Shown piece by piece: positions 15,502-28,140 of a stretch of DNA of 51,850 bases. The notes below the pieces were generated by a model. It worked only from the letters and a program-made list of their open reading frames with translations, searched no databases and had not been told where the DNA came from. The position numbers were made by a program, and so were the translations under genes. Source of the DNA: Octopus bimaculoides (Eukaryota); contig NC_068986.1 in NCBI RefSeq assembly GCF_001194135.2, forward strand, positions 61,974,698 through 62,026,547, given 5' to 3'. Numbering within the stretch: the first letter of the stretch is position 1; each line of letters starts with the position of its first letter.

Positions 15502-18154
15502 ATGGGTGAAGATAGTGGATACTTTAGCCGCCGCTCCTGCCAGTTTCGACTTCCTACACGAAAGCAACATCAACAACAAACAGATACGGGTAACTGCAAG
15601 AAAAAAAGCTCTAATGGATACGACTGTAATGCTGCTACTAGTTCGGTTGCAAACTGCATAAATAAAAGTGAAGCTATAACAACCAGTGGCTGTTGTGATG
15701 CTGTTACTGATGCTAACAATTATAACAATACCTCTATTACTGTTGCTAATTGCACCAATAACAACTGTCGCGCCGATCTAAATAGCAAAAATTCTGGAGA
15801 TCACCGCTACTCTTGTGATCATCTACAATTTGATCTGCGATGCAGACCAGTGGAACAAAATGTAGTTTCCTCTCTCTCTCCAAGACAGGTGTTTGATGTA
15901 GTAACTGAAAACACGACAAATCGTAACCCCTCAAATAGTTTAAACAGTTCTATTAATAGCTGTTCACTATTAGTTGATGACGTGAGAGATGCTAATAACG
16001 ACAGTACATGTACATCCAATTTGCCGTGTAGCTTATACAGTCGACCGGTACATCAAGTCGGTAGTTCTGCTATCGACACAGATACTACTTATAATACTGG
16101 AAGTAGTAGTTCTAGTGGTGGTTATTACACTCAGACGAACAACAGTTGTGGTCGAACGACATTTTCTCCAAACAGTATACTCCATTTGAAATACACAGAT
16201 CTCAACGATTTGAACTCTTACAGAAATTTATGTTACGTGTTTAAGGACGAACAGGATTTTGAAGAATTTAAACAAGAATTACAAGACTTCCAGTTTCTGA
16301 AAGAAAGTCTTCAGAAAAGTGGATGTAATCACGACTACCAAGTATCTCCACTGCGCGAAATACCAGTAAATATTGAAGAACAATTGGCCCAAAATAACAG
16401 ATTCGGAAACAGCCCGAGTAATAGTCCAATTTTTACCAGTATTAACCAGCAGGATCAACAAAACAAAGTTAACAATAATATCTGTGATGATCAAAGTGCG
16501 AATTGTTTAACATTGCAGGAGGAAACTTTCTCTACACGTAACTCTGGAAGAATTCTTGGTTGTGATATTGTACCTGTTCCTATTGCTACTACACCAGCAG
16601 CTTCTTCAGAAACTTCGTCATCATGCCAACCTCGTTTTGTTAACACCTGTATTTCTTCCTCACCAACGCCAAGCAGTTGTAATAAAGCCAGAATCACAAA
16701 TTCTATAAGCAGACGAAGTTCTTCAAACTCCTCGTCCCCTCTGAAATATTTATCGTCGTCTTTCAGAAACGCATTAGCCCCACATGACATGTTAATGGAC
16801 TTTTTCAAAAGTGATGAAAATTTCCAGGAGTTCGAACGGGAGTTTGCTAACTTGGATAATGACTTCAATGTGTTCGGTCGACTTGGTCGAATAGAGGACA
16901 GTGAAGATAGAGACCAAGTATTTGCAACTAGAGATAGAAAACGTAATGTTGAGAGTGAAGGGCGAAGTTCGATTCCTTTGAAAATTAATTTTCAACAGGA
17001 TACGAATGTTTGTTGTTCGAATGAACACATGCCACTGACTGAACTAAAAGTTAAACACAGTTCAGCTGGGGCTAAACAAGATGTTGCAGTAACGAAAAGT
17101 ACTGGGAAAAGTGATTCCTTTTCAGATTTCTTTGACAATGACGAAGATTTTAAGGAATTTGAGAAAGAATTTGCTAACTTCAAATTGCGGAGAAGATCAC
17201 GAGCTTTTGCTGATGATTTTAACAGACGTTCAAATTGCGATCTGTTTGCTGATTTTTTCCCCAAGTTTGAAAATCAGGAAAAAATCGAACGGCGAAGTCG
17301 TGGACCTGCCAATGATTGGGATTATTTATTTAACAAAATCAAAAGAAACAGTGGATTTTTGGCGGATGTTAATGAACTGCAAAGTACACCTTGTGAAAGA
17401 TCTCAGAGCCCTACGTTTTTGGCCACACAATCTCCTAAAAGAACTACTGAAGATATTTCAACATCACTTTGCAAAGCAAACGAAAGTCCAGTAAGAAAAC
17501 CTATCGAAATAGCCGTTCAACGACGACCTCCTCTCCCGCCTCTAGTAACAAAACATCCACACTTTTCATGTGAGCGACACAACAGCTCAAGTTTGCAGAA
17601 AAAGCCTTTGGAATTAAAGATTGAACATGTATCCTCTCCAGTATCGCTTAATTTCCGAAATGACAGCCCCAATCCGTTGTCAGACAGTGTTGGCAGCACT
17701 TACATGCGAATACCCAAATTAATAGATGAGGAAGATAGAGAAGAGTCTGTATCACCGACAGTATTACATATCGATGAAACTCCCGTGTATAATCCAGATA
17801 CTACTGGTACTACTGATGCTTCTAATAGTGCAGAAGAACTTTCTCACATTATTATTGAACATCATTTCACCGGTGGTGTTTCTAAACCAACTCTTACCAT
17901 TACTAGGAGAACGAATAAGTCGCTGGATGAGGCCAGTGAAAGCGAATCTCCCGTTTCTGTACACGCACAACAATTGTCTGAGCTGAGGGATAAACGTTGC
18001 CACACGGACCCACCTAGAATTGTTATAGAGCATAGGTTTTCTCCCCGTGAGTTTGAACCCGGTTCTAGTAAACAGAATAGGTTTTCTACTGCGTTGGAAT
18101 TTTTACAGGATGTGGATTCAGGCAAAGTTGAGGATAAGAAAAAACCACACAAAG
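15502..18154 (+). CDS. Giant (probably first) coding exon of an unidentified, largely low-complexity S/N/T-rich protein; unspliced ORF is 903 aa to 18213
   Basis: Uninterrupted 2.7-kb ORF in AT-rich DNA. ggtATGg start context with an in-frame stop upstream at 15433-15435. Donor AAAG|GTAAGC at 18154/18155 (phase 1) after ...VEDKKKPHK. No transposase or RT motifs. Confidence 0.8.
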
Positions 18155-19789
18155 GTAAGCAAGCAATAGAGAGACTGGTTTGTGGAAGTCATCATTCATT
18201 TCGATTGTTCTAATTTTTTAATGATGATTATGTGAATTGAGTTCGATTTCCAAATAACAATTTTATTTTTTTTAAATATGTTCAAATAACTCCTTATTAC
18301 ATATCCATGCATACGTGAAGTATGTATTTGTCGTGTGTGTGTTTGTGTTTCCATATATACCTATAAATATAGTTTTAATTGAAGATGAAAAAAAACTTTG
18401 CAAACTGTTACTGTGTTCGTGTGTGCGAGTAATTGTAATAGGCTACAGCGCTTTATATATATATATATATATATAAATAAAAACATAAATTATTTATAAA
18501 CGCCCTTACGTATACATTTCTCCGAAGGGTTTTCGCTTGAACATTATTATTGTCAGTTCAGACCCGTTTGTCATTTAAACGGAGTTCTTTATTATTTATT
18601 CGTTTGAGTAAAGCATGATTGCTCGCGGATGGTTTTGATCCAACACGAGCTGCTATTTCCAGCAGATCGAGTGACCACACAGAGGCTCTCGCTAACTCGA
18701 TGTATACTTGAAGAAGCAGAATTCAAGGCTGCTCTGTCTTAGGTTTCTGTTCTTACTCTCATCACGTTAAGTGTTGTAAGTTGTTAAACGTTCAGTTGAC
18801 TATTTCAATTATTTACATTTACCTAGTTCTACTGCATTACCAGCATATGAGGACTCCAGCAAAAACAGTGGATAATATTTGCATTGCTACAAAGATTAAC
18901 TGGGAATTTACTAAGTCAACATACCTTTCTTGTCTAAGTTTGTTGATCTGAATTATAAAAAAAAGTTAGTAATTGCCGCAGAAAGAAGTTAGAAAATAGT
19001 TCAAATGAAGATAAAAATTGTGGGATAGTTTCTTTGTTAGAATTCAGTTCATTTCAAATGTAGGCGCGTGTGCGCCCAAGACAGTTACAGCATAGCTCTG
19101 TCTTTTTGTCTCATCTTTTGGAAATCAGAGAAATCTGTGAAACCAGTTAAGTCTTTAAAAATTCAAAAATAAAAAAATCTAAATGAATTCCAGTGCATAT
19201 TCAACTTTTTTTTTTTATATTTCTACCTTCATGGAATAAAATAACTTTGTTTCATATACACATACAAACACGTATATATGTGTATATACACCCATTATGT
19301 ACATATGTATACACACACACACACACTTCAGTTATGTAGCCATGTGCACTTTTTTTCCCTTCTCTGGATCTTATTCCTCTCCTCTTTCTGATGAAGAGCC
19401 ATGCCTGAAATGTTATACACTCTTTTTTCCCCTCTTATACTGAGTGTCAACCATGTGTACATCTTTTTGATTTTTGTTTTGTTATTTTTAATTTTCGATT
19501 TGCCTATGTATATATGTGTGTTTGTGTATGCATCCCTAGCTTTACGGAAGTAGTATATTTCCGAAAATATGTTTGTAATGTGAAATTTCATAGTGCAAAG
19601 TTAATTTTCCTATTATCAAATGAGATTGCGTTCTTATGGACTCCTTCAAAAGAAAAAAAAATACACAAGAAAGCAATAGAGAACAAGCAACACACTCACC
19701 TTTATACATGAAAATAATTTCTAAACTTATACATAAAAACAAAAACATTCCAAGTGGAATGAGTTAGAGAATTAATAAGAATCAAAATA

Positions 19790-25777: not shown

Positions 25778-28140
25778 CCATATTTGCTGGTGTATTAACC
25801 GCACTTTTTCTGATGGGGAAAATCCAGGAAAAGGGGTGTGCGGTTTATACATGGGTACAATGAAAAGTCAGTCTAAAGCCCGAACATTATTTCATGTAAT
25901 TATCCAAGATTCATGTGGTACTAGCTTCTCTTACAATTCTTACTTTTAAAACTAGCAAAAAACCTGTTTAGATATTCTTATTTCAGTGTCATAGTCCATT
26001 TTGTCCGTCATACACTCTTATAACATTACACATTTCAAGCCAACGTATGCCGGTGTTATCTCAATCGCAGCCTCTGCTTAGATGGTGCTGTAGCCCTGTA
26101 GAAGAGGGACATGTACCGGTAGAAAAGTAGTGAGAATTTCTGTAAAGACTTAGCTTTTGTCCAACAAATGCACTATGATTGACAGCTGATTGCAATTTCC
26201 ACTCACCCTTTGACTTACCGTGAATTACCTATGAGTTTGGTAATCCCCAGGTCTACGACATAAACAACTTTTGTTTGGTGACCTAGATGTATGACTTATC
26301 TCACCATGTAGGGAAACGAGAGAGAGAGGGAGAGCTGTGATTTATTCTTGAACGTGATTGTTGAAATGTATTTAGTAGGTAAGAAGTAAATGAAAATGGA
26401 ATATGAAAAAGTTATTTCATATAAGGGGAGGTAATTGCATTTATTCAGAATTATCTTGAACCAGGAAAGGTAAGTTTCAGCACCATCACCAATGTTACAA
26501 AGGAATATAAATCAACTGGAATTTCATTACCGTACCTTAAAGTACTGGTAAGTGCATTGGTTTGTTTGTGTTTTGTAATATATCTACGTAAATACTTAAA
26601 GAAATTGATAATGATGAAAGGAAGCTTTCAAGCTACATCCCATTGATTGGACCACAATTAGCTTTACTGACTTGTCTACTCCGCTTTTCAAGTTCCATGT
26701 GACTCATCTACTTTGCTCTATAAGTTCAATGATGGTGAAGTGATCATGCTGAGACGAACATTCATAGCCGCCTTCAAGCTCTCAGCTCCCAGGTTTGCTG
26801 AGGAGTTTGGAAACCATGCAGTGGGCCGTCACTTCTGGGTTGATGCATCTGTTGTCTGACAGCGCTCCGATAAGGCCACAATCGAATCAATGCCCAAGAA
26901 GAAGAAGGTGATGAGGGGCAAGACTGCGCAGTGGCCGGAATTAGAGGAGAAGCTTCTAGGATGGGTGAAGAAGAAGATGGTGGGATTCACGGTGTCATCA
27001 CCGACCCTTCGAATTGAGGCCAAGAAGATCGCCAAAGACATCAGCATCAGAGACTTGTGTTCCAGCACATCATGAGCTTTCTGGTTTATGCACAGACATG
27101 ATCTGTTCATCAGGTGTCGCACCCACATTGCACAGCAGCCACCTGAAGAGCTTGACAAGAAAACTGAGTGGTTTCAGCAGTTTATCATCAACCTGCGTAA
27201 ATGGCATCAGTACCCTCTGAGCTGCATTGGCAATGCAGACCAGATTTCCCTCACATTTGATCTTCTGATGGCGAGAAGTCTTTGCTAAGAAGGGGAAGAA
27301 AATAGTGGAAATCGTCATAATGGGTCATAAGAAGGACTGTTTTACAGTGATGCTGGCTTGTACGGCTGATGGAGGAAAGCTGCCAACCATACTTTGTCTT
27401 CAAGAAGTCACTACCCAAAGATGCCAAGTTTCTGGAAGGGGTCATTGCTTGAGCCCAAGTGAAAGGTTGGATGGACCAGGCACTCATCAAGGACTGGCTT
27501 CAGGTAGTGTGGGGGTGGCACATCAGTGGACTGCATCAGAGAAGGAGTCTCCTGGTTCTGGATGCATTCAGATGCCACAAGTCAGAAGAAACCAAGGCGA
27601 AGATACGTCATCTGAACATCGATGTGGCAGTGATCCCCAGGGAATGACATCCCTTCTTCAACCCTTTGATGTTGCAATCAACAAACTGTTTAAGGACTGT
27701 CTCAAGCACCGCTGGGAGGATTGGATGGCCAATGCACCGAAGGAGATGACAGAAACTAGGTGCATGAAGAAAGTCAACATGGGGATGATCTGCGAGTGGA
27801 TCCTGAAGATCTGGAAGGAGATTCCAGCAGACATCATCAATCGGGCTTCCCTGAAGTGCTGCATATCCAATGCGCTCGATGGCACAGAAGATGACATCTT
27901 GTGGGAAGACAAGACCATCTCTCCTGACTCTTCTGACTCCAGCAATGACGAGGATGAACTGGCATATGCAGGTGATCAACTCTACGAGGTCTTCAATGGG
28001 TCGTCTGATGATGAAGAGTTCTTAGGCCTTGAGTGAAATCTCTACCCATTAGGGTCGATCTTTTTTTAGGACCACACATTTTCAAGAAAGAATATAAAGA
28101 CCACAATATGAATAAATCATATAAACGCACGTTTTCTTGA
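25778..28140 (+). mobile_element. pogo-family (POGK-like) DNA transposon, transposase pseudogenised
   Basis: 5' end TA|CCATATTTGCTGGTGTATTAACCGCAC with inverted partner gtgcggtttatac. Coding ~26750-28036: Brinker-like RRTFIAAFKL, CENP-B HTH QWPELEEKLLGWV, DDE motifs IGNADQ, KGWMDQ, LLVLDAFRCH, GMTSLLQPFDVAINKLFK; frameshifts present. Confidence 0.85.

What the first reader, a model, noticed from the sequence alone, without database searches (positions are those of the whole stretch)
16237..17184. Orphan 903-aa ORF contains three copies of an unrecognised aromatic/acidic helical module
Seen: YVFKDEQDFEEFKQELQDFQ (16237-16296), DFFKSDENFQEFEREFANLD (from 16798) and DFFDNDEDFKEFEKEFANFK (17125-17184) stand out from an otherwise S/N/T/C-rich, disordered-looking protein. 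The codons have diverged while the F..DE.F.EF..EF pattern is kept, which suggests selection at the protein level. Each module is followed downstream by an I/V-rich beta-type motif (REIPVNIEE, SSIPLKINF, KPIEIAVQ). Established: F/D-rich N-terminal segments and IxI/IPV motifs characterise small heat-shock proteins and their partners such as BAG3/starvin. Inference: this may be a lineage-specific multivalent scaffold for sHSP-type interactions. Gene identity is unknown.
Basis: partly seen in the sequence, partly recalled or inferred. Interest (0 to 1): 0.7.

Follow-up and report, generated by a model that had tools for sequence, protein, structure and literature searches.

The report
Conserved helices in mollusc RASSF exon
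The "orphan" ORF is the giant alternative first coding exon of the octopus RASSF1/5-type Ras-effector (Hippo-pathway scaffold) gene, and its three phenylalanine/acidic modules are real, strongly constrained helices found in this gene in cephalopods, gastropods and bivalves, with an unknown binding partner and no support for a small-heat-shock-protein role.

Summary
M2 and M3 are far more alike than chance allows. The modules evolve at dN/dS about 0.05, against 0.56 for the rest of the exon.

The ORF is not an orphan. Residues 1-884 (15502-18154, donor AAAG|GTAAGC) match Octopus bimaculoides LOC106878752 exactly. That protein continues into half a C1 zinc finger, an RA domain and a SARAH domain, so it is a RASSF1/5 (Nore1)-type protein.

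An exhaustive profile search found the same ordered set (N-terminal DSGY.S, M1, M2, M3, a Trp helix, half-C1, RA, SARAH) in gastropods, bivalves and cephalopods. In several species it alternates with a short isoform that has a complete C1 finger, as human RASSF1C alternates with RASSF1A.

AlphaFold2 predicts the modules as the only ordered parts of the exon (pLDDT 86-98, helix-kink-helix). There is no Pfam, PDB-sequence or Foldseek match.

The sHSP/BAG3 idea is not supported.

Most likely these are Phe-faced docking or regulatory helices of the C1-less isoform. The partner is unknown. Interest is modest.

The parts
15502..18154 (+). Giant coding exon (aa 1-884 plus the first base of a split codon) of the RASSF1/5-type gene LOC106878752. 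It is the alternative 5' coding exon of the long, C1-less isoform.
   Evidence: 100% identity to P0001 over aa 1-884. In-frame stop 23 codons upstream of the ATG. Donor AAAG|GTAAGC, phase 1. Overall omega 0.46 against another octopod.
15502..15555 (+). Conserved N-terminus MGEDSGYFSRRSCQFRLP, containing the DSGxxS motif DSGYFS (15511-15528).
   Evidence: Invariant in six cephalopod sequences. MEDSGY[FY]S is the start in most gastropods. No substitutions at all against the octopod L001.
16150..16311 (+). M1 block (aa 217-270): GR..FSP..IL.L.Y.DL...[YF]..L...F.DE.DFE.FKQEL.DFQ.LK.
   Evidence: AF2 pLDDT 91-98 with helices 231-236, 238-244 and 250-277. The scallop equivalent has pLDDT 88-95. Conserved across molluscs. 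Omega 0.16.
16777..16884 (+). M2 block (aa 426-461): APHDMLMDFFKSDENFQEFEREFANLDNDFNVFGRL. The core is 16798-16857.
   Evidence: 34 of its 36 residues are invariant in the cephalopod alignment. The mollusc consensus is LMEFF..DEHFQEFERVFET. AF2 helix-kink-helix 427-437 / 439-454, pLDDT about 91. Omega 0.19 against the octopod; dN 0.095 against cuttlefish-type.
16966..16992 (+).
   Evidence: pLDDT < 50 and no strand.
17113..17280 (+). M3 block (aa 538-593): DSFSDFFDNDEDFKEFEKEFANFK (core 17125-17184), then the basic stretch LRRRSRAFADDFNRRSNC, then a degenerate fourth copy DLFADFFPKFENQE (17239-17280).
   Evidence: The longest conserved island between octopus and the cuttlefish-type sequence. 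Omega 0.028 for aa 538-620. AF2 helices 539-545 and 548-563, pLDDT 86-88. R564 and S566 are nearly invariant across 41 mollusc sequences.
17287..17361 (+). W block (aa 596-620): ERRSRGPANDWDYLFNKIKRNSGFL. The mollusc consensus is LWNS..EWD.[IV].NK.KRNSR.
   Evidence: W606 and K612 nearly invariant. AF2 helix 605-615, pLDDT about 60.
17494..18117 (+). Cephalopod-type tail with short conserved motifs: RKPIEIAVQRRPPLPP (17494-17541), KPLELKIEHVSSP (17602-17640), TVLHIDETP (17758-17784), HIIIEHHF..SKPTLTITRRT (17845-17913), DPPRIVIEHRF (18007-18039), KQNRFSTALEFLQDVD (18070-18117).
   Evidence: Conserved between octopods and cuttlefish-type sequences. LHIDE and FSTAK recur in some gastropods. All lie in 10-residue blocks with mean pLDDT of 55 or less, with no predicted secondary structure.
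18155..18160 (+). Splice donor GTAAGC. The next exon (outside the window) starts with the second half of a C1 zinc finger (D)CQYTCHKTCRQLVTLDC.
   Evidence: C1_1 profile positions 33-52 of 53 only.

Best explanation
The ORF is the large alternative 5' coding exon of the octopus RASSF1/5 (Nore1)-type gene. Its product is a Ras-association / SARAH scaffold of the Hippo (MST kinase) pathway.

Shown:
- The exon joins to the second half of a C1 zinc finger. This long isoform therefore lacks a functional C1 and carries about 880 mostly disordered residues instead.
- Within that disorder, the three modules are ancient paralogous copies of a roughly 25-residue helix-kink-helix element: a short helix ending in FF, an [S/N/G]-D-E cap, then a helix with Phe at i, i+3, i+7 and i+10. 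The helix is acidic at its start and basic at its end.
- The modules are present in the same order in gastropods, bivalves and cephalopods.
- They are under strong purifying selection and are the only parts predicted to be ordered.

Inferred:
- Together with a fourth conserved Trp helix, they form the functional core of the long isoform. This could be a small helical unit whose Phe faces pack against one another across variable linkers, or a set of fold-on-binding docking helices for one partner.
- This core takes the place of the C1 finger as the N-terminal regulatory or targeting element of the RASSF-MST scaffold. The conserved but unexplained N-terminal exon of vertebrate RASSF1C / RASSF3 / NORE1B plays a comparable role.
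- The invariant RRS and KRNS sites next to M3 and the W helix suggest control by a basophilic kinase.

The partner is not identified.
For: Gene identity:
- 100% match to LOC106878752.
- RA at 1035-1124 (E 1.7e-13), Nore1-SARAH at 1133-1172 (E 5.6e-11), and the C1 profile matched only at positions 33-52 of 53.

Alternative exon:
- In Mya (P0018 / P0085) and Saccostrea (P0059 / P0073), the long and short isoforms come from the same contig and are identical downstream of ...C-x2|C-QYTCH.
- The short isoforms have a complete C1 (PF00130, E 2.7e-14).
- A cuttlefish short isoform with full C1 exists.

Conservation:
- An exhaustive hmmsearch of 1.84 billion representatives found 32 hits, and every named one is a mollusc.
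- The order M1-M2-M3-W-halfC1-DSGY-RA-SARAH is invariant.
- F247, D252, E254, F256, K257, L260, M432, F434, D438, F441, E443, F444, R446, F448, F540, F543, F544, D547, F550, F553, E554, E556, R564, S566 and W606 are at least 90% conserved in 41 sequences.

Selection: omega 0.03-0.19 in the blocks against 0.56 outside, with similar dS.

Structure:
- The octopus model has pLDDT 91-98 (M1), 91 (M2) and 86-88 (M3), and below 50 for most of the rest.
- The same helices appear in the scallop full-length model.

Repeat homology.

Analogy: the RASSF1A/1C alternative promoters and the unexplained conserved N-terminus of RASSF1C / RASSF3 / NORE1B are described in PMC2586335.
Against: - No partner, localisation or expression data exist for this region.
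- Coordinates and PAE of the models were not available, so packing of the helices against one another rests only on unusually high pLDDT. In the scallop model M2 and M3 reach only 56-83.
- Linkers between modules range from about 35 to more than 400 residues, which is unusual for a single folded domain.
- No Pfam, PDB-sequence or Foldseek relative gives a functional anchor.
- That the octopus gene itself also makes a full-C1 isoform was not shown. No first-half C1 exon lies in the window.
Confidence: 0.6

Rival explanations
1. Multivalent scaffold for small heat-shock proteins. The F/acidic helices and the following IPV/IxI-type strands would dock onto alpha-crystallin domains, as the IPV motifs of BAG3/starvin do.
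For: Cephalopods keep [ST].IP[LMVI].[IV][DN] between M2 and M3; cuttlefish-type sequences have PIPVHVD and PIPIHVD. Some unnamed homologues that resemble caenogastropod sequences carry VTIPIRIIR, VIPIQLV or IVLPIKLV. From memory, these resemble BAG3 HIPIQVIRK.
Against: These motifs are absent from scallop, oyster, mussel, limpet and abalone homologues, which keep all three modules. Where present, they lie at different places relative to the modules. REIPVNIEE is not conserved even between two Octopus species. There is no predicted strand or order and no BAG, WW or alpha-crystallin domain. The conserved signal lies in the helices, not the I/V motifs.
Confidence: 0.05
2. FFAT-like motifs. DFFDNDE (M3) and [DE]FF..DE (M2) would bind the MSP domain of VAP proteins and tether the long RASSF isoform to the endoplasmic reticulum.
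For: The M3 core across molluscs is D-F-F-D-N-D-E, preceded by acidic or Ser residues. That matches 6 of the 7 core positions of E1F2F3D4A5x6E7 (definition in PMC7705450).
Against: Position 5, which sits in a small hydrophobic pocket and is Ala in conventional motifs, is a conserved N (about 80%) or H/T in the sequences inspected. Position 4 of M2 is N/K/S/Q/G rather than the required acidic or phosphorylatable residue in most species. M1 has no FF. Conservation extends 15 residues beyond any FFAT core. AF2 predicts a helix, whereas FFAT peptides bind in an extended form.
Confidence: 0.1
3. Nuclear export signals. Each module is a CRM1-binding hydrophobic helix, and the adjacent basic RRRSR stretch is a phospho-regulated import signal, giving a nucleo-cytoplasmic shuttling switch.
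For: Each module contains one match to the pattern Phi-x2-Phi-x3-Phi-x2-Phi. An invariant basic RRS patch directly follows M3. Human RASSF1C moves between nuclear bodies and cytoplasmic microtubules (PMC2586335).
Against: Any amphipathic helix satisfies that pattern. The number of matches in the exon (4) is not above shuffles (mean 1.6, P = 0.089). Conservation of the acidic and polar positions is far stronger than I would expect of an export signal (my own knowledge, not tested).
Confidence: 0.12
4. Chance low-complexity similarity or a non-coding ORF: the repeats have no function.
For: The rest of the exon is compositionally biased and fast-evolving (omega 0.56).
Against: The M2-M3 score is about 10 sd above shuffles. 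Omega is 0.05 in the modules with normal dS. The modules are conserved in three mollusc classes. The NCBI gene model matches exactly.
Confidence: 0.01

Closest known systems
RASSF1C / RASSF5C (NORE1B, RAPL) / RASSF3: the C1-less isoforms and paralogues of the classical RASSF family
   Same: Same family: RA and SARAH domains downstream. The same logic of an alternative 5' exon replacing the C1 zinc finger (PMC2586335). An N-terminal [DS]SGY.S motif like the SSGYXS of RASSF1C (PMC10487276). In both cases the N-terminal exon is conserved and its function is unknown.
   Different: The vertebrate exon is about 50 residues, while the mollusc exon is 300-900. The mollusc junction lies inside the C1 finger and leaves half of it. 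The mollusc module profile gives negative bit scores against the human N-termini as I recalled them (sequences from memory, unverified). M1-M3 therefore have no detectable vertebrate counterpart.
BAG3 / starvin IPV motifs and sHSP partners
   Same: Disordered scaffold with short I-P-[IV]-type motifs in some lineages.
   Different: No BAG or WW domain. The IP motifs are not conserved across molluscs and are not coupled to the modules. The conserved elements are acidic Phe helices, which are not a described sHSP-binding element.
FFAT motifs (VAP/MOSPD2 ligands)
   Same: [quoted passage not shown]
   Different: Position 5 is N/H rather than Ala or another small residue. M2 and M1 fail position 4. 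The element is about 25 residues long and predicted helical.
Acidic-aromatic amphipathic helices that fold on binding (for example p53 TAD1 ETFSDLW, VP16-type activation helices)
   Same: Composition and predicted behaviour are similar (my own knowledge). The start of M3, [DE][ST]FSDFF, resembles p53 ETFSDLW, and mammalian RASSF proteins are reported to contact MDM2. Both points are recalled, not tested.
   Different: The i, i+4, i+7 hydrophobic triad used by MDM2 ligands is not kept: the i+7 position is Asp. No homology was detected. This is a lead only.

Membership tests
Classical (C-terminal) RASSF family, RASSF1/3/5 branch | Ras-association (RA) domain | tested here: met
   PF00788 at aa 1035-1124 of P0001, E 1.7e-13, 51.4 bits against a cut-off of 21. 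It is encoded outside the window. P0001 is identical to the window exon over aa 1-884.
Classical (C-terminal) RASSF family, RASSF1/3/5 branch | C-terminal SARAH domain | tested here: met
   PF16517 Nore1-SARAH at aa 1133-1172, E 5.6e-11.
RASSF1A / NORE1A-type isoform | Complete C1 (DAG/phorbol-type) zinc finger upstream of RA | tested here: not met
   Only profile positions 33-52 of 53 are matched, at 12.4 bits against a cut-off of 26.5. The exon junction falls between the two Cys of the second C-x2-C. Sister isoforms in Mya, Saccostrea, Haliotis and cuttlefish have the full finger.
RASSF1C / NORE1B-type isoform | Alternative 5' exon that replaces the C1-encoding exons and joins the shared RA/SARAH exons | tested here: met
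   Shown for Mya (P0018 / P0085) and Saccostrea (P0059 / P0073): same contig, identical sequence after the junction. For octopus, the long form is shown. The short form is inferred from cuttlefish.
RASSF1C / NORE1B-type isoform | N-terminal SSGYXS-type motif | tested here: met
   DSGYFS at aa 4-9, invariant in cephalopods and present in most gastropods. Whether it is homologous to the vertebrate motif or convergent was not resolved. A second ETDSGYRSG lies in the shared exons.
BAG3 / starvin | BAG domain and WW domain | tested here: not met
   No such Pfam hit in P0001 or four other mollusc homologues at E <= 1, and none in the window ORF.
BAG3 / starvin | Conserved IPV motifs | tested here: inconclusive
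   An IP.[IV]-type motif is kept in cephalopods and a few unnamed homologues resembling caenogastropod sequences, and is absent in bivalves, limpet and abalone. Binding was not testable.
Small heat-shock proteins | Alpha-crystallin domain | tested here: not met
   No PF00011 hit.
FFAT motif | Core E/D-F/Y-F-D/E(or pS/pT)-A(small)-x-E with an acidic tract, bound in extended form | tested here: not met
   M3 is D-F-F-D-N-D-E, with N (or H/T) at position 5 in the sequences inspected. M2 has N/K/S/Q/G at position 4. M1 lacks FF. All are predicted helical. Criteria are from PMC7705450.
CRM1 nuclear export signal (class 3 pattern) | Phi-x2-Phi-x3-Phi-x2-Phi that is accessible and CRM1-dependent | not testable with these tools
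   The pattern is present once per module, but its count is not above shuffles (P = 0.089).

The most novel reading that the evidence does not exclude
M1, M2, M3 and the W helix together are a previously undescribed, mollusc-wide protein domain of about 170 residues, built from pieces separated by disordered linkers of very variable length. It would be a Phe-zipper helical unit that replaces the C1 finger as the autoregulatory or targeting element of a RASSF-MST (Hippo) scaffold. If so, it could offer a tractable model for the equally unexplained conserved N-terminus of vertebrate RASSF1C / RASSF3 / NORE1B.
Probability: 0.3. Interest if true: 0.45.

Novelty: new variant of a known kind. Interest (0 to 1): 0.3.

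Why it matters
RASSF proteins link Ras/Rap GTPases to the MST (Hippo) kinases. How their C1-less isoforms (RASSF1C, NORE1B/RAPL, RASSF3) differ mechanistically from the C1-bearing tumour-suppressor isoforms is still unclear. A 2007 review notes that the conserved N-terminus of the short isoforms has an unknown role (PMC2586335).

Molluscs turn out to have a much larger and strongly constrained N-terminal exon at the same place in the gene. It contains four well-defined helices in an otherwise free-evolving disordered chain. That gives a defined set of residues to mutate and to use as bait.

For genome annotation, it turns dozens of "uncharacterized protein LOC..." entries into long isoforms of RASSF1-like, and it defines a region with no Pfam match. 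It does not change any general principle.

Tried and rejected
- tblastn of the full protein against the window found no downstream exon there.
- tblastn with 22 mollusc short-isoform N-termini found no first-half C1 exon in the window.
- Pfam on the ORF gave no hit at E <= 1.
- A PDB sequence search with the module profile gave 0 hits at E <= 10.
- Foldseek of the octopus model against the PDB gave 0 hits at E <= 10.
- The search for homologous proteins with a concatenated-block alignment scored only 639 candidates and returned one oyster-like fragment. That search was effectively wasted.
- The module HMM against human RASSF1C / RASSF3 / RASSF5C N-termini written from memory gave negative bit scores, so no case for homology of the modules.
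- The hydrophobic moment (Eisenberg, 100 degrees) did not single out the modules.
- The class-3 export-signal pattern is not enriched.
- I considered whether conserved Cys in the long exon could complete the half C1 finger. The second Cys of the S.CDI...AFCD block is lost in cephalopods, and the C.C just before the junction is present in only some species. Rejected.
- PP2A-B56 LxxIxE (FERVFE in M2 of gastropods and bivalves) was rejected as general, because cephalopods have FEREFA.
- An EB1 SxIP reading of SSIP was rejected: acidic context, and A-P-I-P in one cuttlefish-type copy.
- Model coordinates and PAE could not be read, so inter-helix contacts could not be measured.
Full report
**1. What is in the sequence**

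The window holds one long ORF on the + strand, 15502-18213 (903 aa).
- M1, YVFKDEQDFEEFKQELQDFQ, is aa 245-264 = 16234-16293.
- M2, DFFKSDENFQEFEREFANLD, is aa 433-452 = 16798-16857.
- M3, DFFDNDEDFKEFEKEFANFK, is aa 542-561 = 17125-17184.

The similarity is beyond chance.
- The M2-M3 ungapped BLOSUM62 score is 75. The best 20-mer pair in 300 shuffles averaged 35 (sd 3.8, maximum 51).
- M1 is a weaker copy, scoring 47 against M3 and 41 against M2.
- There is a fourth, degenerate copy, DLFADFFPKFENQE, at aa 580-593.
- M2 and M3 share 13 of 20 residues. Nine of those 13 use different synonymous codons, so the copies are old.
- The exon is S/N/T/C-rich.

**2. What gene it is**

The ORF is not an orphan. 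Residues 1-884 are identical to Octopus bimaculoides LOC106878752 isoform X2 (P0001, 1186 aa). The match ends at a canonical donor, AAAG|GTAAGC, at 18154/18155. The last 19 codons of the ORF are intron read-through. An in-frame stop lies 23 codons upstream of the ATG.

The rest of P0001 is encoded outside the window. It contains:
- (D)CQYTCHKTCRQLVTLDC, which matches only positions 33-52 of the 53-position C1 zinc-finger profile
- a Ras-association domain (PF00788, aa 1035-1124, E 1.7e-13)
- a Nore1-type SARAH domain (PF16517, aa 1133-1172, E 5.6e-11)

It is therefore a classical RASSF1/5 (Nore1)-type protein. The window carries its giant 5' coding exon.

**3. Conservation**

Orthologues were found in O. 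sinensis (86%), another octopod (80%), Argonauta hians (58%) and two decapodiform-type sequences (34-36%). The 90% cluster of one decapodiform sequence contains an Acanthosepion pharaonis protein.

In the alignment the modules are invariant islands in fast-changing flanks. Nei-Gojobori estimates against the octopod locus L001 are:

| Region | omega | dS |
|---|---|---|
| Three 20-mers | 0.053 | 0.24 |
| aa 538-620 | 0.028 | not quoted |
| M1 block | 0.16 | not quoted |
| M2 block | 0.19 | not quoted |
| Rest of exon | 0.56 | 0.18 |

Against the cuttlefish-type locus, dS is saturated and dN is 0.078 in the modules against 0.717 elsewhere. Synonymous sites are not constrained, so the selection acts on the protein.

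**4. Not cephalopod-specific**

I ran a profile of the six cephalopod sequences with HMMER against 1.84 billion representative proteins. It found 32 proteins at E <= 0.001, of which 28 were at E <= 1e-10.

Every hit that carries a name is a mollusc:
- Patella, Haliotis, Gigantopelta, Nucella, Biomphalaria, Argopecten, Mya.
- also Physella, Batillaria, Plakobranchus, Candidula, Mizuhopecten, Pecten, Saccostrea, Mytilus, Tegillarca, Sinanodonta, Solemya, Mercenaria and Dreissena.

No named non-mollusc was hit.

All hits share one order: N-terminal MEDSGY.S, M1, M2, M3, W helix, half-C1, ETDSGYRSG, RA, SARAH. The consensus elements are:
- M1: GF.DE.DFEDFKQDL..F..LK, preceded by IF.L.F.DL..S..Y
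- M2: LMEFF..DEHFQEFERVFET
- M3: D..F.DFFDNDEDF.EFE.EF..FK..RRS

Linkers between modules range from about 35 to more than 400 residues.

**5. Alternative isoforms**

In several species the same gene also gives a protein of about 440-460 aa with a complete C1 finger (PF00130). The Mya pair (P0018 long, P0085 short) and the Saccostrea pair (P0059, P0073) each come from one contig. They become identical exactly at ...C-x2|C-QYTCH, inside the C1 finger. A cuttlefish short isoform with full C1 also exists.

The long exon therefore removes four of the eight zinc ligands and substitutes the module-bearing region. This parallels human RASSF1A (exons 1alpha and 2alpha-beta, with C1) and RASSF1C (the single alternative exon 2gamma). 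A review states that the conserved N-terminus shared by RASSF1C, RASSF3 and NORE1B has an unknown role (PMC2586335).

The module profile does not match the human short N-termini as I recalled them (negative bit scores). Those sequences are from memory and unverified.

**6. Structure**

AlphaFold2 on the 884-aa octopus exon, with 41 aligned mollusc sequences, gives mean pLDDT 48. The confident segments are exactly the modules.

| Element | Helices | pLDDT |
|---|---|---|
| M1 block | 231-236, 238-244, 250-277 | 91-98 |
| M2 | 427-437, 439-454 | about 91 |
| M3 | 539-545, 548-563 | 86-88 |
| W helix | 605-615 | about 60 |

The full-length scallop homologue shows the same helices: M1 at 88-95, M2 at 56-76, M3 at 69-83.

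Each module is a short helix ending in FF, a break at [S/N/G]-D-E, and a longer helix with Phe at i, i+3, i+7 and i+10. The helix is acidic in its first half and basic at its end.

I had no access to coordinates or PAE. Whether the helices pack on one another is therefore an inference from the unusually high local confidence. There is no Pfam family, no PDB sequence relative and no Foldseek match.

**7.

- REIPVNIEE reads RETPENIEE in O. sinensis and is deleted in the other octopod.
- SSIPLKINF is kept only as [ST].IP..[IV][DN] within cephalopods.
- KPIEIAVQ is part of a cephalopod-only block, RK.[IV]EIA[VI]QRRPPLP.
- IP[IV]-type motifs occur in a few unnamed homologues that resemble caenogastropod sequences, but between M1 and M2. 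They are absent from scallop, oyster, mussel, limpet and abalone homologues, which keep all modules.
- AF2 gives no strand or order at these motifs.
- There is no BAG, WW or alpha-crystallin domain.

The sHSP-scaffold reading has no specific support.

**8. Other readings tested**

- FFAT. The M3 core is DFFDNDE and fits six of seven core positions. Position 5 is a conserved N or H rather than Ala. M2 fails position 4, M1 lacks FF, and the element is helical and much longer than an FFAT (criteria from PMC7705450).
- Export signal. One Phi-x2-Phi-x3-Phi-x2-Phi match lies in each module, but the count is not above shuffles.
- PP2A-B56 and EB1 motif readings fail on conservation.

**9. Most likely mechanism**

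Shown:
- The exon is the alternative 5' exon of a RASSF1/5-type gene.
- The modules are ancient paralogous helices under strong purifying selection.
- They always co-occur in the same order.

Inferred:
- They form the functional core of the C1-less isoform. This could be a small Phe-zipper helical unit spanning variable linkers, or cooperative fold-on-binding docking helices.
- That core regulates or targets the RASSF-MST scaffold. The invariant RRS after M3 and KRNS after the W helix are candidate sites for a basophilic kinase.
- The partner is unknown.

I put about 0.6 on this general model and about 0.3 on the packed-domain variant.

**10. Verdict**

This is a real, well-conserved and apparently undescribed region, but it lies in a known gene family and follows a known logic of alternative N-termini. 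I class it as a new variant of a known kind, with modest interest (0.3).

Noticed in passing
window 15511-15528 (aa 4-9); also P0001 aa ~940 (outside the window): DSGYFS at the very N-terminus fits the DSGxxS beta-TrCP phosphodegron pattern. It is invariant in cephalopods and present in most gastropods. A second copy, ETDSGYRSG, lies in the shared exons before the RA domain. Bivalves instead carry DTG[FY]YS near the 3' end of the long exon. Human RASSF1C binds beta-TrCP through an SSGYXS motif (PMC10487276).
   Followed up: partly
window 18154/18155 and the next exon (outside the window): The exon junction lies inside the C1 zinc finger, between the two Cys of the second C-x2-C. The long isoform therefore keeps only C, H, C, C of the eight zinc ligands. 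In the scallop model this remnant has pLDDT of about 33.
   Followed up: partly
window 17602-18117: Cephalopod tail motifs: KPLELKIEHVSSP, TVLHIDETP, HIIIEHHF, DPPRIVIEHRF and KQNRFSTALEFL. PRIVIE fits a PxIxI-type calcineurin-docking pattern, and VLHIDE/IIIE resemble SUMO-interaction motifs (my recollection, not tested). LHIDE recurs directly before M3 in Nucella, Batillaria and similar unnamed sequences, and downstream in heterobranchs. FSTAK recurs in heterobranchs.
   Followed up: partly
window 17239-17280: A fourth, degenerate copy of the start of the module (DLFADFFPKFENQE; score 40 against M2). In non-cephalopod molluscs the same position reads S.CDI..D.KAFCD, with two conserved Cys.
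   Followed up: partly
window 17185-17205 and 17335-17349: RRRS after M3 (R564 and S566 at least 90% conserved in 41 mollusc sequences) and KRNS after the W helix look like basophilic-kinase (PKA/AGC-type) sites next to the helices.
   Followed up: no
window 16834-16851 vs 17161-17178: In coleoid cephalopods M2 ends EFANL, like M3 (EFANF), and the codons TTT GCT AAC are identical. All other molluscs have ERVFET in M2.
   Followed up: partly
window 27305-28036 (+): A 243-aa ORF matches the C-terminal part of a DDE_1 transposase (PF03184, E 4e-8). It is a pogo/Tigger-type transposon remnant and coincides with the GC-richest 2-kb bin of the window (GC 0.446 at 26001-28000).
   Followed up: partly
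P0019 / P0045 (unnamed Logan contigs): A homologue whose M3 (EFEEEFANFK...DDFNRRSWCDL) is closest to the cephalopod form is followed by a long tail of RSQSYDFS-like repeats. Its taxon is unknown.
   Followed up: no
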